From positions 62,001 through 126,000 of IMG/VR virus record IMGVR_UViG_3300025030_000041: a stretch of 64,000 nucleotides of DNA. One strand, given 5' to 3'. Positions 1,676 to 51,179 of this stretch are shown piece by piece. The notes under the pieces were generated by a model. It was given only the letters and a program-made list of their open reading frames with translations. It ran no database searches and was not told the DNA's origin. The first letter of the stretch is position 1; each line of letters opens with the position of its first letter. The translations under genes were made by a program, and so were the position numbers.

Positions 1676-1996
1676 ATGAAAAAATATGTTAAAATCTTTG
1701 AAGATTTTATAAAAGACTCCGCCAATAATATTTATAATGAAGATTTAACTGAAATTATAGGCTGGCTATTAAAATACGGAAAATCTAAATCTGGAGAATC
1801 TGTAGAAGATGAATTAATTAAATTTAAAAAAGAGTTAAATACTAAAGGCATTGGCCAAGAGACTACTGATTTTTATGAATTAGAACAATACATTAGCAAA
1901 GATGAAAAAATAGTAATTATAGACAGCCTATTTAATATATTTTTAAATTTAAATGATTATTATAGAATTAATATGATAGGTAAAAACATCAGTTAG
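1676..1996 (+). CDS. hypothetical protein with MKKYVKIFEDF leader
   Basis: ORF; shared N-terminal motif. Confidence 0.7.
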   Translation: MKKYVKIFEDFIKDSANNIYNEDLTEIIGWLLKYGKSKSGESVEDELIKFKKELNTKGIGQETTDFYELEQYISKDEKIVIIDSLFNIFLNLNDYYRINMIGKNIS

Positions 1997-21613: not shown

Positions 21614-23324
21614 ACACTCTATAAATATTCCGGCTTAGCATTATCTCATGCCCTGTCATATTCTTATCGTATCCTTCTCTTACTAATACATCCTTCCTAA
21701 AATTAAACCTATGCCTCCTTACTCCATCTATAACATACCAATAATTAGGTCCACTTGTACTAGCATACCTAAATCCTAACTTAATATATAAATTATCATC
21801 CTTATAATTTGTCCAACCCTGGTCGGCATAACTTATAATTTTATATGGATTATATGTTTCTATAAAATATTTAAATAGTTTAGAGGCCGCTCCTACTACA
21901 CTAGTATTTAACTTATTGCAAAACCTCAATAACTCATACTCGTCAATCTTATTTTTACTGCCTAATGACTTCCTCAATTTACCAAATGTCATCAAACTTA
22001 CTAACTCCTCCCTGTTATACAAACCTATATTGTATTTACTTACGCACTTTCCCTGCAAATGATTATCTTCTAAAAACTGATTAGACTCTTTAAACGACAC
22101 TTCTCTAACCCCGCACTTCCTAGAATATATCCGATTAGGAGTCTTATTTAAAAGGTTAAGAATTCGTGATTTAATAATATCTTGCTTAAATACCCAGTTA
22201 TCCTCAAATATGTGAATTAAGGTTATACCAGTTTTATTACACTCAAACGTTTTATTTAAATGATAATTATTGCCTTTAAATAACTCATTATGCCAATATA
22301 CTCCATTAAATTCAAATGCTAATTTATAATCAGGTAAATATGCATCTAATTCATTATATTTAAAATTTTTTAAAACTTTTTTATTCTCATATACATATTC
22401 ATTAGACTTAACATTATCTTTTATAAAATTTAATAACTCTTTTTCAGCAATAGAACATTTTTTAAAAATAGGAGGATTACCCTTGCGACATGGGGAAGTT
22501 TTAAATTTAATACATCTATTAAATGGTCCAACTAAAATATCAAAAATTGAATTACAACTATTACAACTTACAGTATAGGATTTCATATTATACTCTATGA
22601 TGATATTAATATTTAAAAAATCGTTAGATATTTTCTTTTTTATATTTAAAGCGTTTAAACTTTTAGTTTTACCACTCCTTTTACCTATATCTTTAAATTG
22701 TGATACATTTTTTACATTATATTTTTTTAAATTAGTTTGTTTAGTTTTTTCTTTAATAATACTACTAGCTAATCCTACTCCATTATATAATCTCATGTGC
22801 GTATCAAGAGCTTTCTGTTTTATTTCATTAGACTGTAAAGGAGATTCTACACCATATAAATTGAGCGTCGTATTCTTATATGTTTCTCTTACTTTAGGAT
22901 TAGACCAATTATGATAATACCCAGTTTTTTCAAAACACTTCTGCTTAAATTTATTTTTAGCATCATTATTTTTTAAAAAATGGTCTTCACCATATTTTTT
23001 TTTACACGTATTTTTAAAAGAATCATTCTTAGATTTTATCTTACATTCTTTATTTCCACATGTTTTATGATAATACCCTGTAAATAATAATGGATTATTA
23101 CAATAATTGCACCTTTTAATTTCTTTTATATCATATATTAAACTATGTATTCTTTGAGTTATTGAAGCGCTTATTAAATCTAAATAGGAAGTCTCAATAA
23201 CTATAATTTTATTAAAACTCTCACGATTCTTTGCTAAAAGAACTAATGAACTATACCTTATATTAGATGACTCCTTTATATGTTTAATTTCATTAAACAA
23301 AAATTCTCTATTGTATACTTTCAT
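21570..23324 (-). CDS. putative homing endonuclease (Hef/Vsr-like PD-(D/E)XK) paralog 2
   Basis: KKYG repeats, ELDAYLPDYKLAFEFNGVYWH, same C-terminal domain. Confidence 0.7.
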   Translation of the reverse strand: MKVYNREFLFNEIKHIKESSNIRYSSLVLLAKNRESFNKIIVIETSYLDLISASITQRIHSLIYDIKEIKRCNYCNNPLLFTGYYHKTCGNKECKIKSKNDSFKNTCKKKYGEDHFLKNNDAKNKFKQKCFEKTGYYHNWSNPKVRETYKNTTLNLYGVESPLQSNEIKQKALDTHMRLYNGVGLASSIIKEKTKQTNLKKYNVKNVSQFKDIGKRSGKTKSLNALNIKKKISNDFLNINIIIEYNMKSYTVSCNSCNSIFDILVGPFNRCIKFKTSPCRKGNPPIFKKCSIAEKELLNFIKDNVKSNEYVYENKKVLKNFKYNELDAYLPDYKLAFEFNGVYWHNELFKGNNYHLNKTFECNKTGITLIHIFEDNWVFKQDIIKSRILNLLNKTPNRIYSRKCGVREVSFKESNQFLEDNHLQGKCVSKYNIGLYNREELVSLMTFGKLRKSLGSKNKIDEYELLRFCNKLNTSVVGAASKLFKYFIETYNPYKIISYADQGWTNYKDDNLYIKLGFRYASTSGPNYWYVIDGVRRHRFNFRKDVLVREGYDKNMTGHEIMLSRNIYRVYDCGNYKFEWKNEN

Positions 23325-23448: not shown

Positions 23449-25068
23449 TTAGATAAGATTTCCGCCATCTACTACTTTAAATACAAAGTACTGATTTTGA
23501 GGATGGAATCCTGCATCAGTGATTGCATATCTACTCTTTATAGCAAGTTTTGGCCCAAATGTAGATTCGCTAATGGTCTGAAGAGATTCTGCCATAATGT
23601 ATGGAAGGAATTTCAATCCAGGTTCATCATCTTTTCCTTTTCTACCAACTAGAACTCTTTGGTCATTCCAGTTGAGGTTAGGGTCAACGTAGATAGAGAG
23701 GCCATAAACTTTTCCCATTGGGTAGAGTTGTCCAGCTCCTTTTGGCATGTCCATAGGAGCAGAGTTGAATGAATAACCTTGGTTATCCATCATAGCAGCT
23801 GCTATACGGCCATTTGTTACTACGTATTCACCGGCTCCGAAGCGACCTCTGTGGTAGATCAATTGAGATACTTGCATAACTCTTGAGATTAATCTTCTTT
23901 GGAAAGTTGATTGATTTTCAAAAGTTGAAGTAATTGCAGTAAGATCTAGAATTTTAAGGTCTGAACCTTCTGCTTTAACTAATTGATTTGCATGAGTTGT
24001 TCCAAGTTTGAAAAGTTCAGCAACAATTTTCTTAGAAATTGATTGAGAAATTTCGTTAACCCCAACATTTTCAAGCATAGAGATTACATCATAATTCCAT
24101 ACTCGGTTAAGGTCTTGGATTTGTTCAACTGTAGCAGAGATAGATACTTGGTCTCCTTTAGCTTCTATCCATTTAGTGAACATTTTAAGGTTCATTTGAC
24201 GGAAAGTTGAGTTTTCTGCAGTTTCACGGGTCATTCCACCAACTGTGTATGTAGACATATCAGAAGGTAAGAAGTTTCCATTCCAGTCTTGGTCATCATT
24301 ATCACCAGCTCCAGAGAAACCAGAAATATGATTTTCAAGAGCAGAAACTAAAGATGCAGCGTGGGTAGAACCCAAGTTGAAACTATAGGTATTAATTCCT
24401 ACAGTAAGATTCATCTCATTAGCAGATGTAACAACATCTGCAATTGAAAGAGCATCATCAACAGAAACTACTCTGAAGATAATAGCGCCATCAATACGAG
24501 ATTTACCAACAACTTTAAAAGTTGCTAGAACTGTAGCAGGAGATCCATCAGCTGTAACTGTAATAGTTTGACCAGCAGAAAGATCACCGAAAGTAGCAGC
24601 AGGTGAACCTGTTAATGTAGTATCAACGTCGATGTTAGATACTTTAATTAGGAAAGGTTCATTTACACTGTCTAATTTACCACCAGCATAAACATAGTCT
24701 AAGTAAGGAAGGAATCCTACTGGAGAATCCATTGGAATTACCGGAACTAGGTCGAATGCGATAGTTTTAGCTGCAACTTGCATAGCAACAGGAAGAAGTG
24801 TTGGAAATTTATCACCTGATCCTAAAGCTGTACGTGTTGGTGCTAAGGGTGCTCCCATACCATTAATTGAATTAGGGGTTTGGAAGTTTAAGCCTGGAGT
24901 TGATTCAAATAGAGCGCCAGAATTGTCAAACATAGCATGATAATGACAATATTCAGCAATCCATTGCTTTTTATATGTGTCAGTAATACCCTGTTTGTCA
25001 ATCATATGACTCCATGTCTCATTAATCTCTTGGCTGTTTAATTTGCGAAATACTCTTGAATTTGACAT
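23449..25068 (-). CDS. major capsid protein (T4 gp23-like)
   Basis: DLVPVIPMDSPVG, EQIQDL, VYVDP-like IYVDP, FLPYI, PKLAIKSRYA; directly downstream of the protease. Confidence 0.92.
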   Translation of the reverse strand: MSNSRVFRKLNSQEINETWSHMIDKQGITDTYKKQWIAEYCHYHAMFDNSGALFESTPGLNFQTPNSINGMGAPLAPTRTALGSGDKFPTLLPVAMQVAAKTIAFDLVPVIPMDSPVGFLPYLDYVYAGGKLDSVNEPFLIKVSNIDVDTTLTGSPAATFGDLSAGQTITVTADGSPATVLATFKVVGKSRIDGAIIFRVVSVDDALSIADVVTSANEMNLTVGINTYSFNLGSTHAASLVSALENHISGFSGAGDNDDQDWNGNFLPSDMSTYTVGGMTRETAENSTFRQMNLKMFTKWIEAKGDQVSISATVEQIQDLNRVWNYDVISMLENVGVNEISQSISKKIVAELFKLGTTHANQLVKAEGSDLKILDLTAITSTFENQSTFQRRLISRVMQVSQLIYHRGRFGAGEYVVTNGRIAAAMMDNQGYSFNSAPMDMPKGAGQLYPMGKVYGLSIYVDPNLNWNDQRVLVGRKGKDDEPGLKFLPYIMAESLQTISESTFGPKLAIKSRYAITDAGFHPQNQYFVFKVVDGGNLI

Positions 25069-25099: not shown

Positions 25100-27145
25100 T
25101 TATAAATTTTTGTTAATCATTCCTTGGATTTTTTCCAAGTATTCTTTACTATAATTTCTAGTCGTAAATTTCGGCTCATTGGTCTTCTCTTCTTTACTTT
25201 GAGAAGTTTTATTTGATTCGTTTACTTTTTTAGTAGACGATTCTTCTTTAAATTTAGAAACTAAACCTTTAAGGTCTAATCGTGTATCCCAGAAGTTTTT
25301 AACTTGGTATGGGGTTTTTACTTCTCTAACTGAGGCTTGATTATAAATAACAGTTTTTTGTGCTTCATTTAAATTTTCCCATACTTGTTTATATTCTTCT
25401 GGCATATATTTAATAAAAGTAGGAGTATTATTTTCTATAGTCGTTACGGTTCCTTCTATAATTGACATTACATCTTTTTCATTGAAGTATACTCCTTTAT
25501 TTAAAGCTTCAACTATTTTTTCTTTTGTTTTATAATCATAAGAATAGAATTTATCTTTCTTGCTTTCTGATAATAGAGCTAAGAACGGATATTTTTTACT
25601 TTCGATAATTGCTTTAGGTTCATTTGAATTAATTTCAGCTAGAGTTTTTTCTATTTTCTCATTTAGTTTAGTATAGTAATCTAAGTTATTGTTTATATTT
25701 TTTACAGTTGAATTTGATTCTTGAACTTTTTCAACTAAAGTTTCCATTTTAGGAGTTACTTTAGGAGCTATTGCAAACATATTTGTATTTAAATTTTCTG
25801 CAATATGTTCAGTATATTTAATACCACAGTTTAATTGTTCAGCAAGATAATCGCTAAATTCTAAAGAATCATTAATAGAAGTCGACAAATAATTACTAAA
25901 GTTAATATTATTTTCAAGTAGTTTAGCAATATGTTCTGAATATGATATACCATTATTAATGGATTCCGCTAAATAATTTCCGTATTTAATTGCTTCATTA
26001 GTTTTTTGAGCAACATGTTCAGAGTATCCAATTGTATTATTAATATTTTCCGCTAAATAATTACTATGCTCAATTGATTTATTAAGATTTTCTGCAATAT
26101 AATTAGAGAAGTTAATATTATTATTAGTATTTTCTGCTACGTGCTGTGTATAATTGATATTATTATTAATGTGTTCAGCTAAATATTCATTATATTTAAT
26201 AATACCATTCATATTATCAGCTAAATGATCTATATATTCAACTATTTTATTAATTTCTGTTTTATCAGAATTAGCTGGTATATTAGACTCTTTATTTTCA
26301 GTAACAGGAACTAACTTAGATTTAACATCAGATAGCTGTGTTTTAAGAGTTTCAAATTCTTTTTTTACTATTTCAGAATAACCTTGCATTTGATTGCGCG
26401 TTACGTATTCATTTTCTTTAACTTCTGTCATATTAGTTGAAGTATTTTTTTCTTTATTTATTTGTTTATTTATATTAGAATTTTCGGTTGGAATCTCGAA
26501 TACCTCTACATCATCACCGAAGTTTAAACTTTCAGAAATATTTTTAAGTTTTGAAGTAATAGAATTTTTCTTAATAGTTTGTAAACTTTCAAAAATAAAA
26601 TTATAATTACTATTTAAGCTTTCATTAAGAGTTGGTTTTAATATAGCCTCACTAAATCCAGGTTCGCATACTAAATCATAAGTAAAAATTTTATGTAAAT
26701 TTACTTTACCTTCATTTGTCACTTGTCCAGCTGCTCTAGATGATACAGCAATTGGAATACCTGAATCAACTAAAGTTTTAGCGATTTTACCCATTGGAGT
26801 ATCTAATATTCTCAATTTAATAGATATTGTTCTACTATCTTGATTATAATTTAAATTTTCTATAATATGAGAAGCATTCTTATATGATACTTCAAATGCC
26901 TCAGGATGGTCAAGCTCTCCTAATAACATTCGCTTACTAATCTTTTCATTTAACGCATCCAAATGAGGTAAATAGTCTTTCTCTTCATATATTCTATTAT
27001 TATTATTTCTTTTACCAAATACTGCGCAAATACCTTCTAAAACATACGAATCATTTTCTTTCTTTAAAGAAAGAGGAGCCGACTTTTCTAAAATCAAAAC
27101 TTCATTAAATGAAGGAGTTTCAGACATGATTTTACCTACTGCCAT
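25100..27145 (-). CDS. prohead protease (gp21-like) fused to scaffold/core domain
   Basis: NNNRIY, GELDHP, VSSRAAG, YDLVCEPGF, followed by 14-aa repeats. Confidence 0.9.
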   Translation of the reverse strand: MAVGKIMSETPSFNEVLILEKSAPLSLKKENDSYVLEGICAVFGKRNNNNRIYEEKDYLPHLDALNEKISKRMLLGELDHPEAFEVSYKNASHIIENLNYNQDSRTISIKLRILDTPMGKIAKTLVDSGIPIAVSSRAAGQVTNEGKVNLHKIFTYDLVCEPGFSEAILKPTLNESLNSNYNFIFESLQTIKKNSITSKLKNISESLNFGDDVEVFEIPTENSNINKQINKEKNTSTNMTEVKENEYVTRNQMQGYSEIVKKEFETLKTQLSDVKSKLVPVTENKESNIPANSDKTEINKIVEYIDHLADNMNGIIKYNEYLAEHINNNINYTQHVAENTNNNINFSNYIAENLNKSIEHSNYLAENINNTIGYSEHVAQKTNEAIKYGNYLAESINNGISYSEHIAKLLENNINFSNYLSTSINDSLEFSDYLAEQLNCGIKYTEHIAENLNTNMFAIAPKVTPKMETLVEKVQESNSTVKNINNNLDYYTKLNEKIEKTLAEINSNEPKAIIESKKYPFLALLSESKKDKFYSYDYKTKEKIVEALNKGVYFNEKDVMSIIEGTVTTIENNTPTFIKYMPEEYKQVWENLNEAQKTVIYNQASVREVKTPYQVKNFWDTRLDLKGLVSKFKEESSTKKVNESNKTSQSKEEKTNEPKFTTRNYSKEYLEKIQGMINKNL

Positions 27146-27199
27146 ATTAAATCTTTATTTTTATTATTTATATAAATTTTTTTATTATAAAACCTTTTT

Positions 27200-27721
27200 T
27201 TAAACATAAACTTTTCCTTTTACATCAATTACTTTTCTTACTTCTCTTACTGTAAATTTTTTAGTATTATTCTCAATATTAAAGTATTCTCCTACCGCTG
27301 TAGGAGCTCCTTCAAGACTAGTTAAATAATTATCAGAACAATCAAAATCACCACCTACTATTTTTGGACTTCCTTCTAAACTAGTTAAATTATTATTATA
27401 ATAACAACAACCAAAAAAACCAGTTACTTCTTCTAGGTTTAGCTCTTTCAAATTATTTATTTCTTTTAGTCTAACATTACCAATTATAACTTTAATATTC
27501 TTAAAGTCTTGTATATTATTTTTAGTTATAATAATCGTTTTATCGAAGGGTTTAGCTACGAATATTTGTTCTTTGGTATAACCTTTATTGAGGTAAGGAA
27601 GTAATAAATCATCCCACCGTTCTTTAAGTCGTCTAGGTATAAATATATCTTTAGCACTAAGCTTAGACTTATTAGATTCTTCTTCAGATATAAATTGTTC
27701 AAATAGCTTTATATGCTTCAT
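27200..27721 (-). CDS. LRR-like (LTSLEG) paralog with MKHIKLFEQF leader
   Basis: 22-aa repeats; paralog family. Confidence 0.85.
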   Translation of the reverse strand: MKHIKLFEQFISEEESNKSKLSAKDIFIPRRLKERWDDLLLPYLNKGYTKEQIFVAKPFDKTIIITKNNIQDFKNIKVIIGNVRLKEINNLKELNLEEVTGFFGCCYYNNNLTSLEGSPKIVGGDFDCSDNYLTSLEGAPTAVGEYFNIENNTKKFTVREVRKVIDVKGKVYV

Positions 27722-27724
27722 TAT

Positions 27725-28348
27725 TTAAAATAGCATTTTATAAGTTTCTACAAAATTTATAGTAGAGCTAAATGATGGTTTGATTTTTTGAATTATATTA
27801 GAGTCTGGTTCTAAATCTTTGCCATTAATTCTAAAAGAAGTAGTAGTAGGTTTAGCGTTACTGATTATAGTAATATCTTCTTTTAGATCAGCTTCAAATA
27901 TAAAATCGTCATAATTATACTCAGTAACTATTTTAAGACGTAATTCTAAAGTTGGTAATACTCTTAATATATCACCAATTAATTCCATTTTTGAATATTT
28001 TTCCTTTGGTATGCCTAAGTCATCAAAAAATTCAGTTTCTTCAGTTTTTATTATAAAGTCAAGAGGAATTAACATTAAGTCATTATAATTAATAGTAGGT
28101 TCATTAATTGATAATAAACCTATTTTTGCTCCTTTTATTTCTTTATTAACTCCAGATTTTATATCAAATGTAGAATAATAATATTTCTCTTCAATATGAT
28201 TAATTTTACCTCCTAAAACCTTAAGCTTTTTAATACACGCCGTAGTAGTTGAAAAATTTATTTTAATATCTTCTTCAGAATGCTGCTTAATTTCATTAAT
28301 CTTATAATTATTCTTTATTTTATATTCACAGAAATTATCAAATATCAT
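27725..28348 (-). CDS. hypothetical protein
   Basis: ORF. Confidence 0.7.
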   Translation of the reverse strand: MIFDNFCEYKIKNNYKINEIKQHSEEDIKINFSTTTACIKKLKVLGGKINHIEEKYYYSTFDIKSGVNKEIKGAKIGLLSINEPTINYNDLMLIPLDFIIKTEETEFFDDLGIPKEKYSKMELIGDILRVLPTLELRLKIVTEYNYDDFIFEADLKEDITIISNAKPTTTSFRINGKDLEPDSNIIQKIKPSFSSTINFVETYKMLF

Positions 28349-28365
28349 TTTCGTGTATTTTATTT

Positions 28366-29001
28366 TTAAACATAAACTTTTCCCTTTACATCAACTACTT
28401 TTCTTACTTCTTCTTCTATAAATTTTTTAGTATTATTCTCAATATTAAAATATTCTCCTACCGTGGTAGGAGCTCCTTCAAGACTAGTTAAATTATTATT
28501 AGAACAACTAAAATAGCCGTTTACCGTGGTAGGAGCTCCTTCAAGACTAGTTAACTTATTATTATAACAATAAAAATTTCCACTTACTATAGTAGGAGCC
28601 CCTTTAAGACTAGTTAACTTATTATAAGAACAATCAAAAAATCCACTTACTATAGTAGGAGCCCCTTTAAGACTAGTTAACTTATTATAAGAACAATCAA
28701 AATATCCAACTACTTCTTCTATACCTAATACTCTCAAATCATTTATTCCACTTATTCCAACATTACCTATTATTACTTTAATATTCTTAAAATCTTCTAT
28801 ATTATCTATAGTTATAATAATCGTTTTATCAATTGGTTTAGCAATAAATATTTGTTCTTTGGTATAGCCTTTATTTAGGTAAGGAAGTAACAGGTCATCC
28901 CAACGTTCTTTAAGTCTTCTAGGTATAAATATATCTTTAGTGCTAAGCTTAGGAGTTTCTTCTTCAGATATAAATTGTTCAAACAGTTTTATATGTTTCA
29001 T
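28366..29001 (-). CDS. LRR-like paralog with 4 repeats
   Basis: 66-nt near-identical tandem repeats at about 28450-28710. Confidence 0.85.
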   Translation of the reverse strand: MKHIKLFEQFISEEETPKLSTKDIFIPRRLKERWDDLLLPYLNKGYTKEQIFIAKPIDKTIIITIDNIEDFKNIKVIIGNVGISGINDLRVLGIEEVVGYFDCSYNKLTSLKGAPTIVSGFFDCSYNKLTSLKGAPTIVSGNFYCYNNKLTSLEGAPTTVNGYFSCSNNNLTSLEGAPTTVGEYFNIENNTKKFIEEEVRKVVDVKGKVYV

Positions 29002-29363
29002 TATTCTTCAGTTTTAGGTTCAATTTCAGTAGAAGTTTCTTCTGGTTTAATGTCTTCGCTAGGGGTTTCTAATAATTTTTTTTCTAGGTATTCTTTTTGA
29101 GTTTCATAGAATTGTTTAATAGTCGGCCAAGTTAGTGTTACTTCTTTATATAATTCTTCCATTTTTGGTCTAATACTTTTAATATCTGAATTATCATTTA
29201 ATAATACATCTAGTAGAACTGTACGAAATTTAGTTAAACCATTATATGCAGTATCAAAATCTTTTTCATCTAATGTTAGAGATTCTGGATCTTTTTTAAT
29301 ATCAGTAGCCTCATTAAGAATTCCATTTTTAAATTCTTCGTAAAGTTTAAATTTTTTATTCAT
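29001..29363 (-). CDS. hypothetical protein (KLYEEF leader)
   Basis: ORF. Confidence 0.7.
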   Translation of the reverse strand: MNKKFKLYEEFKNGILNEATDIKKDPESLTLDEKDFDTAYNGLTKFRTVLLDVLLNDNSDIKSIRPKMEELYKEVTLTWPTIKQFYETQKEYLEKKLLETPSEDIKPEETSTEIEPKTEE

Positions 29364-29392
29364 GATAAAGTATTTTATTTTTATTTATTTAT

Positions 29393-29944
29393 TTAATCTA
29401 TTGCAACTTTTAAATTAAAATCAAAATAATTAAATGTTGCATCAAATGTATTAAAAGTTGGAGTATTACTGCTATATGATAATTTTAGGCTTGACATTCC
29501 TTTTAATATAACTTTATTATATTCAATTTGGCTAATCGCTTTACCTTCACTATTTAACATTAATACTATAAATGGTGGAAAAACATCAAGCTCAGTATTA
29601 TTAAAATCTAAATAATTTAATGCATTTTCAAGCATAATGAAATAATTTAAAAAAGCGTCCGTTAATTTAAAAGTTAATGTAAATTCTCTAGTAAATAAGT
29701 CTTGAATAGGTTTACTATTTTTCATTTCACGAGTCTTTCCTAATAGTAAAGTTTGAGAAGATGTTGTCATTGACCATCCTGGAAAATCAATTTGTTGTAC
29801 TGTACTTGACATAAAATCAGATATTGTATCATAAGGTAATATTAAACTCTTATAATAATCTTTATATTTATTTTCAATTTCAGAATTAAAAAATTCTTTT
29901 GGAAATTGAAATACAAAACTACTTTGTCTATTATTTAATATCAT
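29393..29944 (-). CDS. putative tail tube-like / virion protein
   Basis: QQIDFPGWS...FTLTFKL...LSYSS...FDATFNY pattern; structural context. Confidence 0.5.
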   Translation of the reverse strand: MILNNRQSSFVFQFPKEFFNSEIENKYKDYYKSLILPYDTISDFMSSTVQQIDFPGWSMTTSSQTLLLGKTREMKNSKPIQDLFTREFTLTFKLTDAFLNYFIMLENALNYLDFNNTELDVFPPFIVLMLNSEGKAISQIEYNKVILKGMSSLKLSYSSNTPTFNTFDATFNYFDFNLKVAID

Positions 29945-29947
29945 TTA

Positions 29948-30484
29948 TTAAAATGTTAAAATTGAAACTATATTATTTTTAATAGTTTGTGTTAAATACG
30001 ATTTATCAATAGACGAAATTGAATCTAATAATGGCTGTTTATATCCGTCTTTATATAATTCAATATACGATTTTACAGTATTTAATAAGTCGAATGCATT
30101 AGATTGTCCAACTGTATTTAATACATATATTTTTGCCTCATCAATAACATTCTCTCTACGAATAATACCTTCATTTATAGATTCTTGAGGAGAATAATAT
30201 TTTATATTAGTTTTAGTATATCCAATATTTCCATTTTCTAAATACCAATCTGAAACTAAAGTTCTATATAAAACTAATCCTAATGAATTTCTAGTATAAA
30301 TTCTAGTTTCTCTAACTATTAAATCTGAATAATCAATCCCATTATAATATTTATAATATTCAATGATAGATAATTCCCCTTTTATAATAGTCCGTTTTTT
30401 ATGAAACCCCATAATATCATAATCGAATAACTCCGGCGAATCATACTTACTATGTATTTTAAATTTAGAACTAATTACAGTCAT
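29948..30484 (-). CDS. hypothetical protein
   Basis: ORF. Confidence 0.7.
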   Translation of the reverse strand: MTVISSKFKIHSKYDSPELFDYDIMGFHKKRTIIKGELSIIEYYKYYNGIDYSDLIVRETRIYTRNSLGLVLYRTLVSDWYLENGNIGYTKTNIKYYSPQESINEGIIRRENVIDEAKIYVLNTVGQSNAFDLLNTVKSYIELYKDGYKQPLLDSISSIDKSYLTQTIKNNIVSILTF

Positions 30485-30500
30485 TTACTTATATATTTTT

Positions 30501-31010
30501 TTAAATAATAACTTCATCTTTTACATCAACTATTTCTCTAACTTCTTCTTCTGTAAATTCTTTGTCATTACCACTAATCCAAAAATCATTTTTAACTATC
30601 ATAGGTGCTCCATTTAAATTAGTTAAATAATTATCAGAACAATCAAAATCACCACCTACTATTTTTGGGCTTCCTTCTAAACTAGTTAGCTTATTTAAAT
30701 AACATTTGAAATTTCCGAATACTTCTTCTATATTTAGCTCTCTTAAATCACTTATTCCTTTTATTCTAACATTACCTATTATAACTTTAATACTTTTAAA
30801 GTCTCCTATATTATCTTTAGTTATAAGCATATCTTTATTAAAAGGTTTAGCAATGAATATTTGTTCTTTAGTATAGCCTTTATTGAGGTAAGGAAGTAAT
30901 AAGTCATCCCACCTTTCTTTTAGTCTTCTAGGTATAAATATATCTTTAGCTCTAATTTTAGGTTTATCTTCCTCAGATATAAACTGTTCAAATAGTTTAA
31001 TAGGTTGCAT
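30501..31010 (-). CDS. LRR-like paralog
   Basis: MQPIKLFEQF...DIFIPRRLKERWDD; LTSLEG repeats. Confidence 0.85.
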   Translation of the reverse strand: MQPIKLFEQFISEEDKPKIRAKDIFIPRRLKERWDDLLLPYLNKGYTKEQIFIAKPFNKDMLITKDNIGDFKSIKVIIGNVRIKGISDLRELNIEEVFGNFKCYLNKLTSLEGSPKIVGGDFDCSDNYLTNLNGAPMIVKNDFWISGNDKEFTEEEVREIVDVKDEVII

Positions 31011-31011
31011 T

Positions 31012-32691
31012 TTATAAGTTTTTAGGTCTTGATATTATTTGTTTTATTTGTATATTTACAGAAGATAGATTATTGTCCGAAATTCCAGTATCAAATTCTA
31101 TATTATTTCTTGTAGAGAATCCTCCTCTAATTAGAGGTAATTCATTTTCTTCTATAATAATATCATTAAATTCGTCTAAACCTATATCAGTTATTGTACT
31201 TAATGTTAGATCTTTATTAATATATTGTAATTCATTCTTTTCACTTATAATATTTATATTAACACTATCTACATCATTAATATTTTCTATTAATTTAATT
31301 AGGTCAGACCGTGGAATCCGGTCTCTTCTCTTGCTATTAATAAAGTATTCTGCAATTTCCTTTAATATTTCATTTTTAATTTGCGGAGGCCCTCCTAATG
31401 CGTCATCATAAATAATAACTGATACATTTATTACATATCTGCTAACTATAGGATCAAGTATTTTAATATCACTTCCAATTAGTTTTGTACCAGATTTTTC
31501 TATATACTCTAATAATTTAGATTTTTGAAATTTGTTTAATGAAAAGCGTTCAACTGGGGTAGAGTAATAATCTTCACTTTTAGAAAATGTTTTTGTAATA
31601 TTGGGTATTACAAAAAGATTAATTAATCTATCATTTTCAGGATCTAAAAATACTCTTATAATAGAAAAGAAATTCATTTTTCTAAGTAATATTTCATAGT
31701 TATCTGCATTTACTAGAGCGAAATTTTTGCTAGCTTTAGGAGCAATTAACCTAGTTAATGCTATAGGTTCAGGGTTAGCCCCAAACGTAGGAGGAGTTTT
31801 AACATTAATTGAAAAAACTTCATTTAAGTCTATTTCATTTCCAAATTGGTCAAATCCAGTATCTATAAATGTAAAAAATAGTCCCTTTGGATTTTGGGTT
31901 ATATCAATATTTCCAGATCCACCCTCATTAACTAAATACTCAACCCTAATATCACTTCCTAGTGTAGGGATAGCCCCAAAATTTCCATTACCAAAAAATA
32001 GGTCTATTCCACTAGTCATACCTGTTTTAATTATATAAGTATTTGCATTTCTAGGCATATCATAAAAACTGTCATACTTATCCCATTTTTCGCCATTTAT
32101 ATAAACGTCTACATTAAATTGATCTACAAAAAAGTTCTTTGAATATTGGACAGCATAACTCTGTAATTGCTGTCCAGTTCCAGTAAATATTTGGGTTTCT
32201 ATAAATCCCTGCTTTATAGTCATACTTTTACCATTATCTAGACCTGTTGTAGATACTTTTATTTCGTCAGTTGGAAATTCAAGTATATATGTTAAATTAT
32301 TGTTTTGGCATTGCAATTTAGTATATTTAGGTATAATAACTATATTATTAGCAACTTGAGTTATAAAATCAGATTTAATATATAATGATATTTCGCCGCT
32401 CGCTGAAATAGACCTAGTAGGTGAATGCCCCGCTAAACTAGCTAATGAATAGATACTAGTTTCTCTAGACGCCTGAAAAATGTTTAATTCAGTAATACTA
32501 TCAGATATATAATATAAAGCCAGCTGCATTAAATTTTCTGATACAAATATAATTTGACCAAATGGAGAAGCCACTGTGAAAATATTGCGTGACTGATTAA
32601 ATTTATCTACTAAATAATCAACTGTGTCACGTAATAATTCAAATGTCTTTAACCGATGTAATCTAAATATCTTAAGTTCTGTAGTAGCCAT
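31012..32691 (-). CDS. baseplate wedge subunit (T4 gp6-like)
   Basis: SIYSLASLAGH, LFFGNGNFGAIP, VEYLVNEG, GANPE, LVNADNYE. Confidence 0.8.
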   Translation of the reverse strand: MATTELKIFRLHRLKTFELLRDTVDYLVDKFNQSRNIFTVASPFGQIIFVSENLMQLALYYISDSITELNIFQASRETSIYSLASLAGHSPTRSISASGEISLYIKSDFITQVANNIVIIPKYTKLQCQNNNLTYILEFPTDEIKVSTTGLDNGKSMTIKQGFIETQIFTGTGQQLQSYAVQYSKNFFVDQFNVDVYINGEKWDKYDSFYDMPRNANTYIIKTGMTSGIDLFFGNGNFGAIPTLGSDIRVEYLVNEGGSGNIDITQNPKGLFFTFIDTGFDQFGNEIDLNEVFSINVKTPPTFGANPEPIALTRLIAPKASKNFALVNADNYEILLRKMNFFSIIRVFLDPENDRLINLFVIPNITKTFSKSEDYYSTPVERFSLNKFQKSKLLEYIEKSGTKLIGSDIKILDPIVSRYVINVSVIIYDDALGGPPQIKNEILKEIAEYFINSKRRDRIPRSDLIKLIENINDVDSVNINIISEKNELQYINKDLTLSTITDIGLDEFNDIIIEENELPLIRGGFSTRNNIEFDTGISDNNLSSVNIQIKQIISRPKNL

Positions 32692-32706
32692 TAATATTAT
32701 TTATTT

Positions 32707-33285
32707 TCAAACTGTAACTTCACCTTTTACATCAATCACTTCTCTTACTTTTTCTGTAAATTTCCTTGTATTATTATTAATATAAAAATTTCCATTAACT
32801 ATTTTAGGAGCTCCTTTAAGATTAGTTAGTTTATTATTATAACAATGAAAACTACCATTCACTATAGTAGGGCCTTCTTCTAGACTAGTTAGTTCATTAT
32901 TAGAACAAAAGAAATTACCATTCACTATAGCAGGACCTCCTTTAAGACTAGTTAGTCTATTATAAGAACACTTAAAATATCCATTTACTTCTTCTATACC
33001 TAACTCCCTCAAATCAGTTATTCCAATTATTCTAATTATTCTAACATTACCAATTATAACTTTAATATTCTTAAAATCTTCCATATTATCTTTAGTTATA
33101 AGTAGCTCACTATCAATTGGTTTAACTATAAATATTTGGTCTTTGGTATACCCTTTATTAAGGTAATGGATAAGTAAGTCATCCCATCTTTCTTTAAGCC
33201 TCCTAGGTATAAATATATCTTTAGCACTAAGTTTAGGAGTTTCTTCCTCAAATATAAATTCTTCAAATAATTTAATATGCTTCAT
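32707..33285 (-). CDS. LRR-like paralog
   Basis: MKHIKLFEEF; 3 repeats. Confidence 0.85.
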   Translation of the reverse strand: MKHIKLFEEFIFEEETPKLSAKDIFIPRRLKERWDDLLIHYLNKGYTKDQIFIVKPIDSELLITKDNMEDFKNIKVIIGNVRIIRIIGITDLRELGIEEVNGYFKCSYNRLTSLKGGPAIVNGNFFCSNNELTSLEEGPTIVNGSFHCYNNKLTNLKGAPKIVNGNFYINNNTRKFTEKVREVIDVKGEVTV

Positions 33286-33311
33286 TATTTTTATTTATTT
33301 TTATTTAAAAT

Positions 33312-33338
33312 AAAAAAGGCTGATGTAAATCAGCCTTT
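33312..33338 (-). terminator. intrinsic terminator
   Basis: aaaggctgat/atcagccttt hairpin with A run on + strand. Confidence 0.7.
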
Positions 33339-33361
33339 ATATAAACAAAAATAGTTTTTTG

Positions 33362-33961
33362 TTAAACGTAAACTTCTCCTTTTACATCAATCACTTCTCT
33401 TACTTCTTCTTCTGTAAATTGCTTTGCATTATTATCAATATAAAAGTTTCCTTTAACTATTTTAGGAGCTCCTTCGAGGCTAGTTAATTCATTATAAGAA
33501 CAATTAAAATATCCATTTATTTTAGTAGGACACCCCTTTAGACTAGTTAAATTATTTGAAAAACAATAGTAACCTCCAGTAACAACTGGACCATTTTCTA
33601 AACTAGTTAATCTATTATTAGAACAATCAAACTCTCCATTAACACGTTTTATATGACCATCAAAACTACTTATATTATTAGTATTACAAGAATAACCTCC
33701 TGTTATTTTTGGACTACCCTTTAAACTTGTTAAGTTATTATCAAAACAACTAAAAGTACCAATTATGCGTTCAATACCTAATTCTTCTAAATTAGATATA
33801 CCCTGTACTGCAACATGGGCAGTTATAACATCTGTATTTTTATACTTATTAATATTTTTTTTAGTAATAACGATATGTTCTTTTGTATCTGGTCTATACG
33901 AACTTGGATAACTTATAGAGTCATTAACAAAGTCTTCAAATAATTTTACATATTTTTCCAT
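33362..33961 (-). CDS. divergent LRR-like paralog
   Basis: MEKYVKLFEDF; about 5 repeats; same C-cap. Confidence 0.85.
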   Translation of the reverse strand: MEKYVKLFEDFVNDSISYPSSYRPDTKEHIVITKKNINKYKNTDVITAHVAVQGISNLEELGIERIIGTFSCFDNNLTSLKGSPKITGGYSCNTNNISSFDGHIKRVNGEFDCSNNRLTSLENGPVVTGGYYCFSNNLTSLKGCPTKINGYFNCSYNELTSLEGAPKIVKGNFYIDNNAKQFTEEEVREVIDVKGEVYV

Positions 33962-34016
33962 TTTCTTATTATATTTTTTAATTATTTATATTGAAAAATT
34001 TCTAAAAATTTATAAA

Positions 34017-34060
<44 letters not shown>

Positions 34061-34095
34061 GATACTCAATTAAATAAAATTTAAAAATAATTTAA

Positions 34096-37000
34096 TTAAA
34101 TGAGTTTAATTTTAATAGATGGAGATATTTTAAATCCGTTATTAGATTCTTTTCTTAAAGTAAATTGAATAACTAAATTATCTAATTTTTGTATAGATAT
34201 GTCTTTTAATAATGAATATCCTTCACTATTTCTAGTCTCGTCATCTATGAAATTAAAGGTAATTTCGTTTGATTCTTTTGTTCTTTGAATATAGAATTCA
34301 GTTTTATCAATTGTATATAGCCTAAGTATATTAGTTTCTAAATATGATTGTATATATTGGTCTAAATTTAATTTATTTAAATATTGAGAGTCGTCTATTA
34401 AAAATTCTTTAAATTTAGTATCTGCTCCATCATCAATTAAATATTTAAGTAATACATTTTTAATATTTATTAAACCGCTTATATTATCGGCGGTTTCTTT
34501 TATAACTATTTGATAGTTGTCTATATTTATATCTTTTAATTCAGAATTTCCAATATTAAATAATTCATAGTTATTAAGTTCTATAGCAAATGGTACATTT
34601 AATACTTTATTCATAAATGAATTATCTTCAGATACTCTAAAACTTCCCGCAACTGGAGTAGATTCAATTTTAGATATATTTTTTTGATGAAATCCCCAGT
34701 CCCAGTTAGATGAAAATATTTGTAAATCTTTTTGAGATATAGATACTTCATCTATTAATGGATAAACCAAATTTCCTTGGTCTAATAGCATTATATTATT
34801 TTCAATAACTTTTAAATAATTAAAATTCTTTATTATTCCAAAATCAGAATGACTATTATTTAAAACCAAATTTGCAAAATTAATTTTAATATTAGGGTCA
34901 TCTTGCCATTTGAAGTCTAAATTATCTTTAAATTTCAAAATATCATTAAAAATAGGTTCATACCCACCATTATATCTAAATACTTCAACATTATTTTTAA
35001 TTGGAAATTGATGATACTCGAATCCAATTAAATCACTAGTTTTTACAGCATCAGGCTTATTATCATCAGCTGAATATCCTAATAAAGTTTCTTTTTTAAT
35101 TATACTTGAATTTAAAATTTCAATATAAAAATTATTTTTAGAACTATTTTTAGTAGGGTTACTCTCATCTATATTACTAGTGGAATTTACAGTATGATAT
35201 TCGATAATTGGTTGATACCTATTAATATAGTCTTTTATTTTTGCAAATGATAATTTTTTAAATAATGACTCATAATATTGTAATCCTCCATTTTTTTGTT
35301 TAAATATTACATTATCTTGAACATAATATAGTGGTAATAGTGACGGTAATATATGACTAATTTGTTCTAGTATTAATCGCTCATTACGACCTGATTCAAT
35401 GATAGTTTGCATTATAATTCCACTTGGAGAAACTCCAGATATTGGACTTATACTATATGTAGTTCCAGCCGGAAATCCTGTAGGGTTAGGATAAGAACTA
35501 GGAGCCCCCTCTATTGAATTAAATCTAATAATATCAAACTCAGTTGATGTAGTATTATTTCTAAATATTAAAGTACCATATGGCTCATACACGCTTGGGT
35601 ATGGACTACCATCATAGTTATCAGAATCAACTTGAAAAGTTTTTAAAAATGAATGTATTTCATCAACTGGATTAGAGTCGTATGTACTAATATTAGGATT
35701 AGCTATTTTAGTGTATTGTCTTAATGTTGTATTATTAATGGCACTTATATCAATAGTATTATTACTATCTAGCCCTACATAAAAAGATAATTTAATATTA
35801 GAATATCTATGATTAGAAACAGGAGAAGATATAGACGGGTATATACCATATCCATTAGATAAATCAGGCAAAATACTTTTCTTATGTTTTAAACTATATA
35901 ATAAGTTATATGAAAAATCACTTATATTATTAGTAAAATTAATTCTATAGTCACCGTCCGTATTATTATCGAAATACCCTACACTAACTTCAATTAAGAA
36001 TAGAATAAATTTATAGTCTTCGTGTTCAATAAATCTAAATCGTATAGGAGGTTGTTTGTTATCATTAATATCTTCTTTTATAGGTTTTAATAAAACTGAA
36101 AACTTATATCCATCATACTTTTTAGAACCAGTTTTATATATAGGTTTTTTATCTTCACCTACTATATCTTTATTTAAAACTTCTTTAAATATAAGTTTAG
36201 TTCCTTTGAAAAATGTTTCACATAGATTTTTATCGTTATTGTATTTTATAAATGAGTATCTAGATTGCAGATTATCTAATTCTTCCCCATCTAATTCATT
36301 TTTAAAATTAAAATAGTCAATGAAATAATCTGAATTAGTAAGGCATTCGTTTAAATCAAATTCAGTATTAAAATATGAATAATTCTTTTTTAGAATATCT
36401 TTGTCTTTTATAAAATCATAAGACGCTTCTAGATATGGCCATTCGTGTGTAAAATTTTCAGGATTTTGTGTAGTGTCATTATGATTTGAGCTAAAATTAT
36501 TAATACCAAATTGAACATTGGTGTTTAATCTATACTCATTATCTCTAATATCTTTGCCACCCTTATATCCCCATTTAGCTATATATGGTAATAATTTGCT
36601 AGTTAACGCAAAATCCTTTACGTAATTCTCTTTATAATAATCGTATTCAGTATTTATTGCTCCATTAATAAATCGATCACGCCTTTCCCATAACTCAGTT
36701 TCCTCACTAGGCTTAGCTAAAACTGGATCTTTTAATATAGAAAATCCAATGAATGCTTTTAATTCGTTATCCTCATCATCTGTCAAATCATCGTTATATA
36801 TGACAATAGGACTTCCAGTATTAATAGTATAACTATTAATACTAGATATTCCAGTAAATATATCATCTATTGCATAAATAACGCTATTATACGAGATTGT
36901 TCCAGTTCCTTTAACTTTATAAACTATTCCAGCTTCAATTAAATCTTTTTTCTCAGGAATAAAATAATATTTGTAATACTCCCATAAAGGCGACTTATTA

Positions 37001-50072: not shown

Positions 50073-51179
50073 TTATTGATTTCTAAGGTCTACTTCTATT
50101 TCTTTTCCTATTTTCTTTAATTTTTCAATTCCATTTTTATTATCAGTTGCTAAAATATCTTTCATTATAGAATTAAAGTCTTGCGCTTTTAGATGAGACA
50201 AATATGCTATTATATTATTTCTATATTTTTCATATCCTGAATCATAAATTGCAGTATTTAGTTTTTCCCAATAGGCTGGACCAATTCGTAATGCCATATT
50301 TTCTTGGCTTAACGAATCAGTTTTATCTATTACATATTTATTCTCTTCTGGAGATAGCTGGGTGTGCTGAGTTAACACTTCAACTACGCCTTTAACTAAT
50401 TCATGTACCAAAAAAGGAAATGATGTTGCCATTGATTCCACTTTAGGAGTATCTCCGGATAAATCTATTTTAACTTTACCTACTCCAGCTTTCTGGCCAG
50501 CTTGCTTTATAATTTCATCAGGAGTTATCCAATACCCATATTCAGTTAATATATTTAAAATAGTATACATATCAGTTAACCCAGGGTGTATCTTTTCGAG
50601 GTCATCTTGTATTAAATAATATGCATATTGTGTTTTTACGGCTGCTCCTTGAATTAACCCATTAATAAATTTACGTTTTTCAACTTCTAAATTTAATTCC
50701 TCTAAATTTTTTAATTTTTTAGGGTCTACTGGAATATCAGATATATCTATATTGCCACCGCCTTCGCTTAAATTTGCATTTAATATTAAGTCATCGTCAG
50801 ACAAATTAAATTCTTTTTTAACAAGGTCAACTGCCAATTTTTCTAATTTTTTAGAATTATTAGCTTCTATTTTTAATATAGTATTATATACATTAACTAA
50901 TATTGGATGTACGTCTCTAATATTAATAACTTCAGTTTTAATATTTAAATATTTTTTTAGTCTATCAATTACATCTTTAAATCTTTTAGATGCTATTAAT
51001 TGGTCAAATGTATCATTATTTTCAGGGTTAGGATATGCTGGATTTTTAGCAAGAGGGTGTTCGCCTTTATTAAAAGACTTCTCTATTCCAGATTCCATAC
51101 GATTTTGGTCATCGTATGATATTGGAGCTTCTGTAATAAATTCTTCAAATAATTTTGTATATTTATTTACACATTTCAT
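50073..51179 (-). CDS. hypothetical protein (KLFEEFITE leader)
   Basis: 368 aa ORF. Confidence 0.75.
   Translation of the reverse strand: MKCVNKYTKLFEEFITEAPISYDDQNRMESGIEKSFNKGEHPLAKNPAYPNPENNDTFDQLIASKRFKDVIDRLKKYLNIKTEVINIRDVHPILVNVYNTILKIEANNSKKLEKLAVDLVKKEFNLSDDDLILNANLSEGGGNIDISDIPVDPKKLKNLEELNLEVEKRKFINGLIQGAAVKTQYAYYLIQDDLEKIHPGLTDMYTILNILTEYGYWITPDEIIKQAGQKAGVGKVKIDLSGDTPKVESMATSFPFLVHELVKGVVEVLTQHTQLSPEENKYVIDKTDSLSQENMALRIGPAYWEKLNTAIYDSGYEKYRNNIIAYLSHLKAQDFNSIMKDILATDNKNGIEKLKKIGKEIEVDLRNQ

What the first reader, a model, noticed from the sequence alone, without database searches (positions are those of the whole stretch)
27200..33961. Dispersed LRR-like paralog family with variable repeat number, interleaved with structural genes
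SEEN: five genes (27200, 28366, 30501, 32707, 33362) share a C-cap (FTxxEVRxVIDVKGxVxV) and 2-5 22-aa repeats (LTSLxGxPxxVxGxFxCxxNx). Four share a near-identical N-terminus (DIFIPRRLKERWDDLL). They sit singly between unrelated genes rather than in one tandem block. Variation concentrates at the xFxCxx positions. INFERENCE: a diversifying binder family, for example anti-defence or host-interaction proteins, spreading by duplication and repeat slippage.
Basis: partly seen in the sequence, partly recalled or inferred. Interest (0 to 1): 0.6.

Follow-up and report, generated by a model that had tools for sequence, protein, structure and literature searches.

The report
Phage LRR family with capsid-targeting leader
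A 246-kb T4-like groundwater phage carries 18 copies of a small leucine-rich-repeat binder protein whose shared N-terminal tag closely resembles the signal phage T4 uses to load proteins into its head, so these are probably a variable set of proteins injected into the host with the DNA, though no experiment yet shows it.

Summary
The five genes are members of an 18-copy family in a 246,115-bp, 26 % GC, T4-like phage from groundwater metagenomes. The repeat is 21 aa, not 22. It is an Internalin-J-type leucine-rich repeat with an invariant Cys. AlphaFold gives a confident LRR solenoid with a disordered 28-residue N-terminus.

The new finding is that N-terminus. MKHIKLFEQFISE matches the T4 capsid-targeting sequence MKTYQEFIAE at the residues needed for targeting (4, 7) and for cleavage (8, 10; L/I-x-E). 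It is under strong purifying selection (pN/pS 0.15 at pS 0.45). Ten unrelated proteins of the same genome also carry it. The phage encodes a gp23 capsid protein and an S77 (gp21-type) prohead protease.

Related LRR arrays occur in many large phages: 438 stretches in IMG/VR, and 11 of 15 large contigs tested are gp23+/S77+. Each genome has its own uniform leader. A cultured T4-like Vibrio phage has one such gene.

Best reading (about 0.45): these are late-made LRR binders that are packaged, processed and ejected, analogous to T4 internal proteins. Packaging, cleavage and targets are all untested.

The parts
27200..27721 (-). LRR paralog, 173 aa: leader, N-cap, 2 LTSL-type repeats, C-cap
28366..29001 (-). 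LRR paralog, 211 aa (P0001): leader, N-cap, 4 units of 21 aa, C-cap. This is the protein modelled.
   Evidence: 63-nt tandem array 28447-28708, 87 % matches
30501..31010 (-). LRR paralog, 169 aa
32707..33285 (-). LRR paralog, 192 aa
   Evidence: 63-nt array 32782-32989
33362..33961 (-). LRR paralog, 199 aa. It has a leader (MEKYVKLFEDFVND) but lacks the DIFIPRR N-cap module; 5 units.
28963..29001 (-). Leader-coding segment (13 codons, MKHIKLFEQFISE) of the 211-aa gene. The equivalent segments of the other four genes are 27683-27721, 30972-31010, 33247-33285 and 33920-33961.
   Evidence: pLDDT below 50 for residues 1-28; pN/pS 0.15
29001..29363 (-). Non-LRR 120-aa gene with the same type of leader (MNKKFKLYEEF...)
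1676..1996 (+). Non-LRR 106-aa gene with a leader (MKKYVKIFEDFI...)
50073..51179 (-). Non-LRR 368-aa gene whose leader follows an 8-residue extension (...KLFEEFITE)
25100..27145 (-). Prohead protease (Peptidase_S77, gp21 type, residues 6-150) fused to a long repeat-rich C-terminal region that is probably scaffold. This is the proposed enzyme that removes the leaders.
23449..25068 (-). gp23-type major capsid protein
31012..32691 (-). gp6-like baseplate wedge subunit lying between two LRR genes
33983..33990 (-). TATAAATA (T4 late-promoter consensus) 29 nt upstream of the ATG of 33362-33961. The upstream region (~90 nt compared) and the leader are also found, near-identical by eye, at a non-LRR gene at genome position 186431.
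27165..27172 (-). TATAAATA 27 nt upstream of the protease-scaffold gene
33315..33338 (-). Terminator-like hairpin (10 pairs plus T run) between the two adjacent LRR genes

Best explanation
The genes encode small (148-297 aa) Internalin-J-type LRR solenoids. The 21-aa unit is F-x-C-S-x-N-x-L-T-S-L-E-G-A-P-x-I-V-N-G-x, with a Cys ladder. An N-cap helix and a C-cap are conserved, and the exposed positions are variable.

Proposed mechanism:
1. The genes are transcribed late with the structural genes (inferred).
2. The disordered 13-residue leader acts like the T4 capsid-targeting sequence and docks the protein on the scaffolding core of the prohead (inferred from the sequence match).
3. The S77 prohead protease cuts after the Glu of F-I-S-E, an L/I-x-E site (inferred).
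4. The mature LRR proteins stay in the head and enter the next host with the DNA (inferred by analogy with T4 IPI, IPII, IPIII and Alt).
5. Their diversified surfaces bind host proteins, most plausibly defence or other early-acting factors (inferred).

Shown here: the family, the fold prediction, the leader's conservation and its sharing with unrelated proteins, and the presence of the gp23/S77 machinery.
For: - T4 IPII and IPIII begin MKTYQEFIAE and IPI begins MKTFKEFTS. The T4 CTS is the first 10 residues; targeting depends on residues 4 and 7, processing on residues 8 and 10, and gp21 cuts after L/I-x-E (PMC9026906). The leader core F-E-Q-F-I-S-E aligns with Y-Q-E-F-I-A-E at all four positions.
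- The motif [LIVM][FY]E[EQD][FY] occurs 27 times in the first 30 residues of 334 genes and 3 times elsewhere (Fisher p 5e-21). Ten non-LRR genes carry it. The extended form ending I/L-x-E occurs 23 times at N-termini and never internally.
- Leader codons have pN/pS 0.15 with pS 0.45, so the constraint is on the peptide and not on recent copying or RNA.
- AF2 leaves residues 1-28 disordered and folds the rest confidently.
- The phage has a gp23 capsid protein and an S77 protease-scaffold fusion.
- The five genes lie in the co-directional structural block. TATAAATA lies 27-29 nt upstream of the protease gene, of one LRR gene and of one leader gene, and 9 of 17 upstream occurrences fall at -26 to -31.
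- In other phages, every LRR gene of an array and some neighbouring non-LRR genes share a genome-specific leader of the same form, for example MKRISNYKTFINE, MKLQELFLKE and MIKLKDILLE.
- 11 of 15 large LRR-bearing viral contigs have gp23 and S77.
- The cultured T4-like Vibrio phage VB_VaC_SRILMA has an LRR gene starting MCTFEEWFGE.
- One leader-bearing neighbour has a sub-threshold match to phiKZ-type internal head proteins (PF12699 E 7.5e-4; phrog_2497 E 0.003).
Against: - There is no proteomic, cleavage or packaging evidence of any kind.
- The similarity to the T4 CTS spans only 7-10 residues.
- The mature proteins are near-neutral (pI 4.9-9.1), unlike the basic T4 IPs.
- Four of 15 LRR-bearing contigs, including one complete genome (G008, whose sampled LRR N-terminus shows no such leader) and one 88 % complete genome with similar leaders (G001), show no gp23/S77 or phrog_207/138 match.
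- The strict T4-like pattern is present in only 4 of 102 and 7 of 59 distant homologues. Most have a looser ...LFE-S/A form.
- One paralog (genome 168289) has no leader.
- TATAAATA is not enriched overall.
- The complex prediction of leader with protease-scaffold gave no verdict.
- A 150-280-aa folded solenoid would have to pass the tail channel or unfold.
Confidence: 0.45

Rival explanations
1. The proteins are intracellular binders that are not packaged. The LRR proteins act inside the infected cell, in host takeover, anti-defence or assembly chaperoning. The shared N-terminal tag serves another purpose, such as recognition by a phage chaperone, a protease-controlled lifetime, or localisation.
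For: - LRR fold with variable surface.
- The leader also occurs in contigs without detectable gp23/S77.
- The proteins are near-neutral and not DNA-binding-like.
- Several copies lie next to replication genes: topoisomerase II and an exonuclease.
Against: - The leader matches the functional positions of the T4 CTS and ends in the protease's cleavage motif.
- The window copies sit inside the late structural block.
- An early-acting anti-defence protein made only late would be of little use unless it were packaged.
Confidence: 0.25
2. The proteins are virion-surface adhesins. The conserved leader and N-cap would anchor the LRR proteins to a common site on the baseplate, fibres or capsid, and the variable LRR faces would bind different cell-surface receptors and so broaden host range.
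For: - Copies lie next to gp6-like baseplate wedge, tail-fibre-like and tail-sheath genes.
- The closest solved sequence relative, Internalin-J, is a surface adhesin.
- The N-cap is very strongly conserved (pN/pS 0.07).
- Late expression is likely.
Against: - No fibre, trimerisation or baseplate-attachment domain was detected.
- Eighteen paralogs would compete for one anchor site.
- The same leader sits on ten small unrelated proteins, and on an LRR paralog that lacks the N-cap.
- In relatives the genes form arrays of up to about 20 away from the tail genes that were identified.
Confidence: 0.15
3. The proteins are prohead core or scaffold accessories. They would be targeted to the prohead by the leader but serve assembly (space filling, size determination) and be degraded or expelled before DNA packaging, with no role in the next host.
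For: - CTS-like leader and S77 protease.
- T4 core proteins gp67 and gp68 behave this way.
Against: - Diversification at exposed positions, copy-number flux and genome-specific expansions are hard to explain for an internal filler.
- Internal L/I-x-E sites were not analysed here, so this is untested rather than excluded.
Confidence: 0.1

Closest known systems
[quoted passage not shown]
   Same: - A short N-terminal leader shared by otherwise unrelated proteins, with aromatic residues at positions equivalent to 4 and 7 and an I-x-E site at 8-10.
- The phage has gp23 and a gp21-type S77 protease.
- The cargo set is variable between phages.
   Different: - The leader is 13 residues, with 3 extra after Met-Lys.
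- The cargo is an LRR solenoid of 135-284 aa, near-neutral rather than small and basic.
- There are 18 paralogs plus 10 other leader-bearing genes, against three IP genes in T4.
- There is no sequence homology of the mature parts, and packaging is unproven.
Listeria Internalin-J (PDB 3bz5), the 21-residue Cys-ladder LRR
   Same: The unit length (21 aa), register and conserved Cys in the core position are the same. The profile match is E 1.5e-16 over three stretches. The Cys ladder was described by Bublitz et al. 2008, cited in PMC7291126.
   Different: InlJ is a large LPXTG-anchored bacterial surface protein with 15 repeats and extra domains. The phage proteins are short, have their own caps, no signal peptide and no anchor.
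phiKZ / 201phi2-1 / SPN3US inner-body and ejection-protein paralog families
   Same: They are multi-copy families of head-internal proteins in jumbo phages, processed after Glu by a gp21-related protease (PMC9026906; PMC5694885 listed).
   Different: The fold family differs: PF12699 does not match the LRR proteins. Only one neighbouring leader-bearing gene gives a sub-threshold PF12699 hit. This phage is gp23/T4-like, not phiKZ-like.
Bacterial injected LRR effectors (SspH1/2, IpaH, YopM type)
   Same: Short bacterial-type LRR units. The profile matches SspH2, SspH1 and IpaH7.8 LRR domains at E 1e-6 to 1e-4, and the structural match is Z about 10. The concept is also shared: a delivered LRR module that binds host proteins.
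   Different: There is no NEL E3-ligase or other catalytic domain and no type III secretion. Delivery would be by phage ejection into bacteria.
LRR multigene families of giant viruses and uncultured Caudovirales
   Same: The closest predicted viral structures are annotated LRR proteins of Marseille-, Mimi-, Pitho- and Klosneuviruses and of uncultured Caudovirales. Short LRR units in dsDNA viruses were surveyed by Matsushima et al. 2021, cited in PMC10945359.
   Different: In the papers I could search, none of those annotations links the proteins to a capsid-targeting leader or a T4-type protease.

Membership tests
Leucine-rich repeat superfamily (InlJ-type 21-residue Cys-ladder class) | Tandem 20-30-aa units with an LxxLxLxxN-like core | tested here: met
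   68 units of 21 aa. F1, C3, N6, L8, L11, G13 and P15 are nearly invariant. The period at DNA level is 63 nt.
Leucine-rich repeat superfamily (InlJ-type 21-residue Cys-ladder class) | Right-handed solenoid with one beta-strand per unit (predicted) | tested here: met
   AF2 pLDDT 86.6 with strands every 21 residues. All 50 best VIA-align matches are LRR proteins, Z 9-13, rmsd 2.7-3.7 A for the top ten apart from a designed LRR at 5.6 A.
Leucine-rich repeat superfamily (InlJ-type 21-residue Cys-ladder class) | Cys replacing a core Leu in every unit, with a 21-residue period | tested here: met
   C3 is present in 68 of 68 units. The profile aligns in register with InlJ 3bz5 at E 1.5e-16.
Leucine-rich repeat superfamily (InlJ-type 21-residue Cys-ladder class) | Pfam LRR model above its gathering score | tested here: not met
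   The best score is LRR_4 at 25.9 bits against a cut-off of 27, and the other four genes score lower. This shows limited model sensitivity for this subclass; the fold evidence is unaffected.
T4-type capsid-targeted internal head proteins | N-terminal leader with targeting residues (4, 7) and an L/I-x-E processing site (8-10) | tested here: met
   The sequence matches in 15 of 18 paralogs (F-I-x-E), with L-K-E in one. This is a sequence-level test only.
T4-type capsid-targeted internal head proteins | Leader shared by unrelated proteins of the same phage | tested here: met
   Ten non-LRR genes carry it; 27 N-terminal against 3 internal occurrences.
T4-type capsid-targeted internal head proteins | Phage encodes a gp21-type prohead protease and a gp23 capsid | tested here: met
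   PF03420 at 34.7 bits (cut-off 27) and PF07068 at 118 bits.
T4-type capsid-targeted internal head proteins | Protein physically present in the head, leader removed, ejected on infection | not testable with these tools
   This needs virion proteomics and N-terminal mapping. The complex prediction gave no verdict.
T4-type capsid-targeted internal head proteins | Homology of the mature part to IPI, IPII, IPIII or Alt | tested here: not met
   No internal-protein family appears among the Pfam or PHROG hits of the LRR proteins. They would be analogues, not homologues.
phiKZ-like internal head proteins (PF12699) | Match to the family profile | tested here: not met
   The LRR proteins give no hit. 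Only a neighbouring leader-bearing 280-aa gene matches, at 19.2 bits against a cut-off of 27.
IpaH/SspH NEL effectors | C-terminal NEL E3-ligase domain after the LRR | tested here: not met
   The proteins end 20 residues after the last unit in a conserved C-cap, and no further domain is present.
Tail fibre / receptor-binding proteins | Fibre, trimerisation or baseplate-attachment domain | tested here: not met
   No tail category appears among the PHROG or Pfam hits of the five proteins.

The most novel reading that the evidence does not exclude
Large T4-like phages carry expandable arsenals of LRR 'effectors'. These are loaded into the capsid through a lineage-specific capsid-targeting leader, trimmed by the prohead protease and injected with the genome. 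Their hypervariable faces would neutralise diverse host defence or sensor proteins at the moment of entry. That would make them a phage counterpart of bacterial injected LRR effectors, and a large extension of the T4 IPI paradigm.
Probability: 0.35. Interest if true: 0.8.

Novelty: new variant of a known kind. Interest (0 to 1): 0.62.

Why it matters
Only a handful of phage proteins are known to travel inside the capsid and act at the instant of infection (T4 IPI, Alt, P1 Dar, phiKZ ejection proteins).

If this LRR family is packaged, hundreds of environmental T4-like jumbo phages carry diversifying arrays of pre-made binders. That would be a large untapped source of inhibitors of bacterial immunity. 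It would also be a natural example of modular protein delivery: a leader joined to a designable repeat scaffold.

The leader rule found here is uniform within a genome and differs between genomes. It gives a simple sequence handle for predicting the packaged proteome of uncultured T4-like phages. A cultured Vibrio phage with one such gene makes the idea directly testable.

Tried and rejected
- Reads and contigs. Only Logan contigs of groundwater metagenomes were available. They break at the LRR genes, and the 'joints' are cross-mapping between paralogs. This gave no evidence for or against repeat slippage or expression, and no RNA run holds the region.
- Complex prediction of the protease-scaffold protein with residues 1-45 of the 211-aa LRR protein. 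The result was no verdict (score 0.00, folded without alignments). It counts neither for nor against binding.
- Foldseek against PDB gave only weak rows (E at least 0.015, TM 0.23-0.43), all but a few of them LRR proteins. VIA-align was needed to show the fold.
- The sigma-70 promoter scan showed no enrichment (60 found against 55 expected).
- TATAAATA is not enriched overall in the window (37 against 46 expected). Only its positional clustering at -26 to -31 is suggestive.
- Rfam found nothing in 26000-35000. No tRNA genes were found in the window.
- A capsid-protein search of IMG/VR with a single sequence found only a fragment of the same phage.
- Repeat-number differences between metagenome alleles cannot be separated from collapse of 63-nt repeats by short-read assemblers, so I do not count them as proof of slippage.
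- The word-based protein search sees only proteins of 0.55-1.75 times the query length and scored only the best 8000 candidates. Counts from it are lower bounds.
- Only genetic code 11 was used.
Full report
**What the window is.** The window is bases 62001-126000 of a 246,115-bp IMG/VR virus record (CheckV 92 % complete, 26 % GC). The same DNA is held by groundwater metagenome runs from three studies. The region around the finding is the structural block of a T4-like myovirus, all on the minus strand:
- a gp23-type major capsid protein (23449-25068; PF07068, 118 bits);
- a 681-aa protein whose N-terminal 150 residues are a gp21-type prohead protease (25100-27145; PF03420, 34.7 bits, cut-off 27), followed by a long repeat-rich part;
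- a gp6-like baseplate wedge subunit (31012-32691);
- two very large unannotated proteins of 1666 and 1194 aa.

**Checking the observation.** All five share the C-cap. Four share the DIFIPRRLKERWDDLL module and the fifth (33362-33961) lacks it.
- A profile of the five finds 18 ORFs in the whole genome at E 4e-60 to 2e-149, so the window shows under a third of the family.
- The repeat period is 21 aa (63 nt at DNA level), not 22.
- Among 68 extracted units, C3 is invariant and F1, N6, L8, L11, G13 and P15 nearly so. Entropy is highest at positions 21, 2, 5 and 7, which flank the short beta-strand, and also at 14, 16 and 17.

**Fold and class.**
- Pfam gives only sub-threshold LRR_4 scores.
- An AlphaFold2 model of the 211-aa member, built on 21 family sequences, is confident (mean pLDDT 86.6, pTM 0.78). 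Residues 1-28 are below pLDDT 50. A helix spans 28-43, and then paired short strands recur every 21 residues up to a C-terminal helix and strand.
- VIA-align against 48,161 PDB representatives returns only LRR proteins in the top 50: Roco LRR at Z 13.0, then InlF, InlC2, SDS22, Leptospira LRR proteins, and SspH1 and IpaH further down.
- A family profile against PDB sequences hits Internalin-J (3bz5) at E 1.5e-16, in register over three stretches, followed by SspH2, SspH1 and IpaH7.8 LRR domains.
- InlJ is the described 21-residue LRR with a cysteine ladder (Bublitz et al. 2008, as cited in PMC7291126).
- These are therefore InlJ-type Cys-ladder LRR solenoids with their own caps and no other domain.

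**The N-terminus is a leader.** Seventeen of the 18 paralogs carry an N-terminal leader of this type: 15 have the F-I-x-E form (consensus MKHIKLFEQFISE), one has L-K-E, and the fifth window gene has MEKYVKLFEDFVND.
- The same kind of N-terminus is present on ten genes that are not LRR proteins. Three of them are in the window: 1676-1996, 29001-29363 and 50073-51179.
- Over 334 non-overlapping ORFs, the motif [LIVM][FY]E[EQD][FY] occurs 27 times within the first 30 residues and 3 times in the remaining 65,608 positions (Fisher p 5e-21). The longer form ending I/L/V-x-E/D occurs 23 times at N-termini and never internally.
- Among paralogs the 14 leader codons have pN/pS 0.15 at pS 0.45. The peptide, not the RNA or recent copying, is therefore what is conserved. 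The N-cap helix region is even more constrained (0.07) and the linker between them less so (0.49).
- Homology between paralogs starts at the ATG and stops at the stop codon.
- One case stands out. The fifth window gene and a non-LRR gene at genome position 186431 share about 90 nt of upstream sequence, including an (AT)n tract and TATAAATA, plus the leader. Their mature parts are unrelated.

**Comparison with T4.** I fetched the T4 record. IPII and IPIII begin MKTYQEFIAE and IPI begins MKTFKEFTS. According to the review of Black's work (PMC9026906):
- the first ten residues of IPIII are sufficient for encapsidation;
- residues 4 and 7 matter for targeting and residues 8 and 10 for processing;
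- gp21 cleaves after Glu in the motif L/I-x-E;
- the CTS is thought to let T4-like phages load varied proteins into the head.

Aligning F-E-Q-F-I-S-E with Y-Q-E-F-I-A-E matches all four positions. The capsid protein of this phage also has an L-F-E site at residues 53-55, ahead of the start of the Gp23 domain match at residue 89.

**Likely timing.** All five window genes lie in the co-directional structural block. TATAAATA, the T4 late-promoter consensus, lies 27 nt before the protease-scaffold gene, 29 nt before the fifth LRR gene and 28 nt before the leader-bearing gene at 186431. Nine of the 17 occurrences within 100 nt upstream of genes fall between -26 and -31. The octamer is not enriched overall, so this is suggestive only.

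**Relatives.**
- The LRR part has more than 7000 metagenomic relatives in the word search and 438 stretches in IMG/VR.
- Of 15 large LRR-bearing viral contigs, the same 11 carry gp23 and S77 matches. Four do not, including one complete genome, and these also lack phrog_207 and phrog_138 matches.
- In these phages the family forms tandem arrays of about 5 to 20 genes.
- Within each genome all LRR genes, and some adjacent non-LRR genes, share one leader, and the leader differs between genomes. Examples are MKRISNYKTFINE, MKILDSNEYINE, MKLQELFLKE, MKLKQLFES, MIKLKDILLE, MKNLKTYKMFES and MKHIQSFSLFEA. In all but one of the eight arrays sampled (G002 is the exception), the leader places hydrophobic or aromatic residues before a Glu within the first 8-13 residues.
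- One genome (G005) also has the IF(I/V)PRR N-cap module.
- The strict T4-like pattern is present in only 4 of 102 and 7 of 59 distant homologues.
- Among cultured phages, Vibrio phage VB_VaC_SRILMA (195.8 kb; gp23 361 bits, S77 87 bits) has one LRR gene with the same 21-aa unit. It starts MCTFEEWFGE.

**Diversification.**
- Crude per-position pN/pS across units is 2-3 at positions 2, 4 and 5, and about 1 at positions 14, 16, 19 and 21 (1.4 at 17). It is 0-0.13 at F1, C3 and L8, and 0.33 at N6. Single-codon estimates are noisy and partly saturated.
- Paralogs are old: median 80 % nucleotide identity in the N-cap, with the closest pair at 97 %.
- A few adjacent units are 94-97 % identical, which indicates recent unit duplication.
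- Three metagenome proteins are 100 % identical to paralogs except for clean 21- or 42-aa deletions. Two others look like chimeras between paralogs. Assembly collapse of 63-nt repeats could produce the deletions.

**Interpretation.** The best-supported reading is that these are late-made LRR binders addressed to the prohead by a CTS-type leader, trimmed by the S77 protease and delivered with the DNA. This would be analogous, not homologous, to the T4 internal proteins, of which IPI blocks a host restriction enzyme (PMC3012670). I put this at about 0.45.

The weaknesses are:
- the shortness of the motif;
- the near-neutral charge of the proteins;
- the presence of leaders in contigs without detectable T4-type head genes;
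- the complete lack of physical evidence.

The rivals are unpackaged intracellular binders (0.25), surface adhesins anchored through the conserved N-cap (0.15) and prohead core accessories (0.10).

**Novelty.** LRR proteins in phages and giant viruses are already annotated and have been surveyed (Matsushima et al. 2021, cited in PMC10945359). The T4 CTS and variable internal proteins are textbook. In the searchable literature I found no link between LRR multigene families and a capsid-targeting leader. I therefore rate this a new variant of a known kind.

Noticed in passing
window 19862-21613 and 21570-23324 (-): Two paralogous genes of about 584 aa lie directly downstream of the capsid gene and overlap by 44 nt. 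Both match homing/HNH endonuclease PHROGs (phrog_3339, E 1e-97 and 1e-114) and DUF7487. One has a weak Mom-like hit.
   Followed up: partly
window 25100-27145 (-): The S77 prohead protease is fused to about 450 further residues containing a run of degenerate repeats (N-I-N-x-S-x-Y-I-A-E-like). Other large phages have S77 ORFs of 664-773 aa, so a protease-scaffold fusion seems typical of this lineage.
   Followed up: partly
window 33994-34056; genome about 186833-186930: An (AT)n microsatellite together with a promoter-like segment and leader is duplicated, near-identical by eye, upstream of an LRR gene and of an unrelated 133-aa gene. It is a promoter-plus-leader cassette shared by different cargo genes.
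   Followed up: partly
genome 168289-168993 (L032:2289-2993, -): One paralog (234 aa) has a degenerate N-terminus with no leader and a damaged IFIP-LKERR module. It is possibly a decaying or differently started copy.
   Followed up: no
proteins P0040 and P0026 (metagenome alleles): These look like chimeras: the N-terminal part matches one paralog and the rest another. This suggests recombination between dispersed copies in the population.
   Followed up: partly
genome 210301-211143 (L013:2566-3408, +): A leader-bearing 280-aa coiled-coil protein next to an LRR gene has sub-threshold matches to phiKZ-type internal head proteins (PF12699 E 7.5e-4; phrog_2497 E 0.003).
   Followed up: partly
window 34096-39096 and 39086-42670 (-): Two giant proteins (1666 and 1194 aa) match only PHROGs of unknown function (phrog_31887, phrog_29329). 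They are probably baseplate or fibre components.
   Followed up: no
L115-L122 (LRR arrays of other phages): Long spurious antisense ORFs run through the LRR arrays, a side effect of the repeat's codon pattern. Gene callers may report them as genes.
   Followed up: no
window 50073-51179 (-): A 368-aa leader-bearing protein has weak CdiI-like (E 4e-4) and LRR_4 (E 0.04) hits, both below threshold. Its function is unknown.
   Followed up: no
phage records LR756501-3 and Lak phages: The same LRR unit type occurs in 540-735-kb 'huge phage' genomes, with up to 14 places per record. The family therefore reaches well beyond T4-like phages.
   Followed up: no
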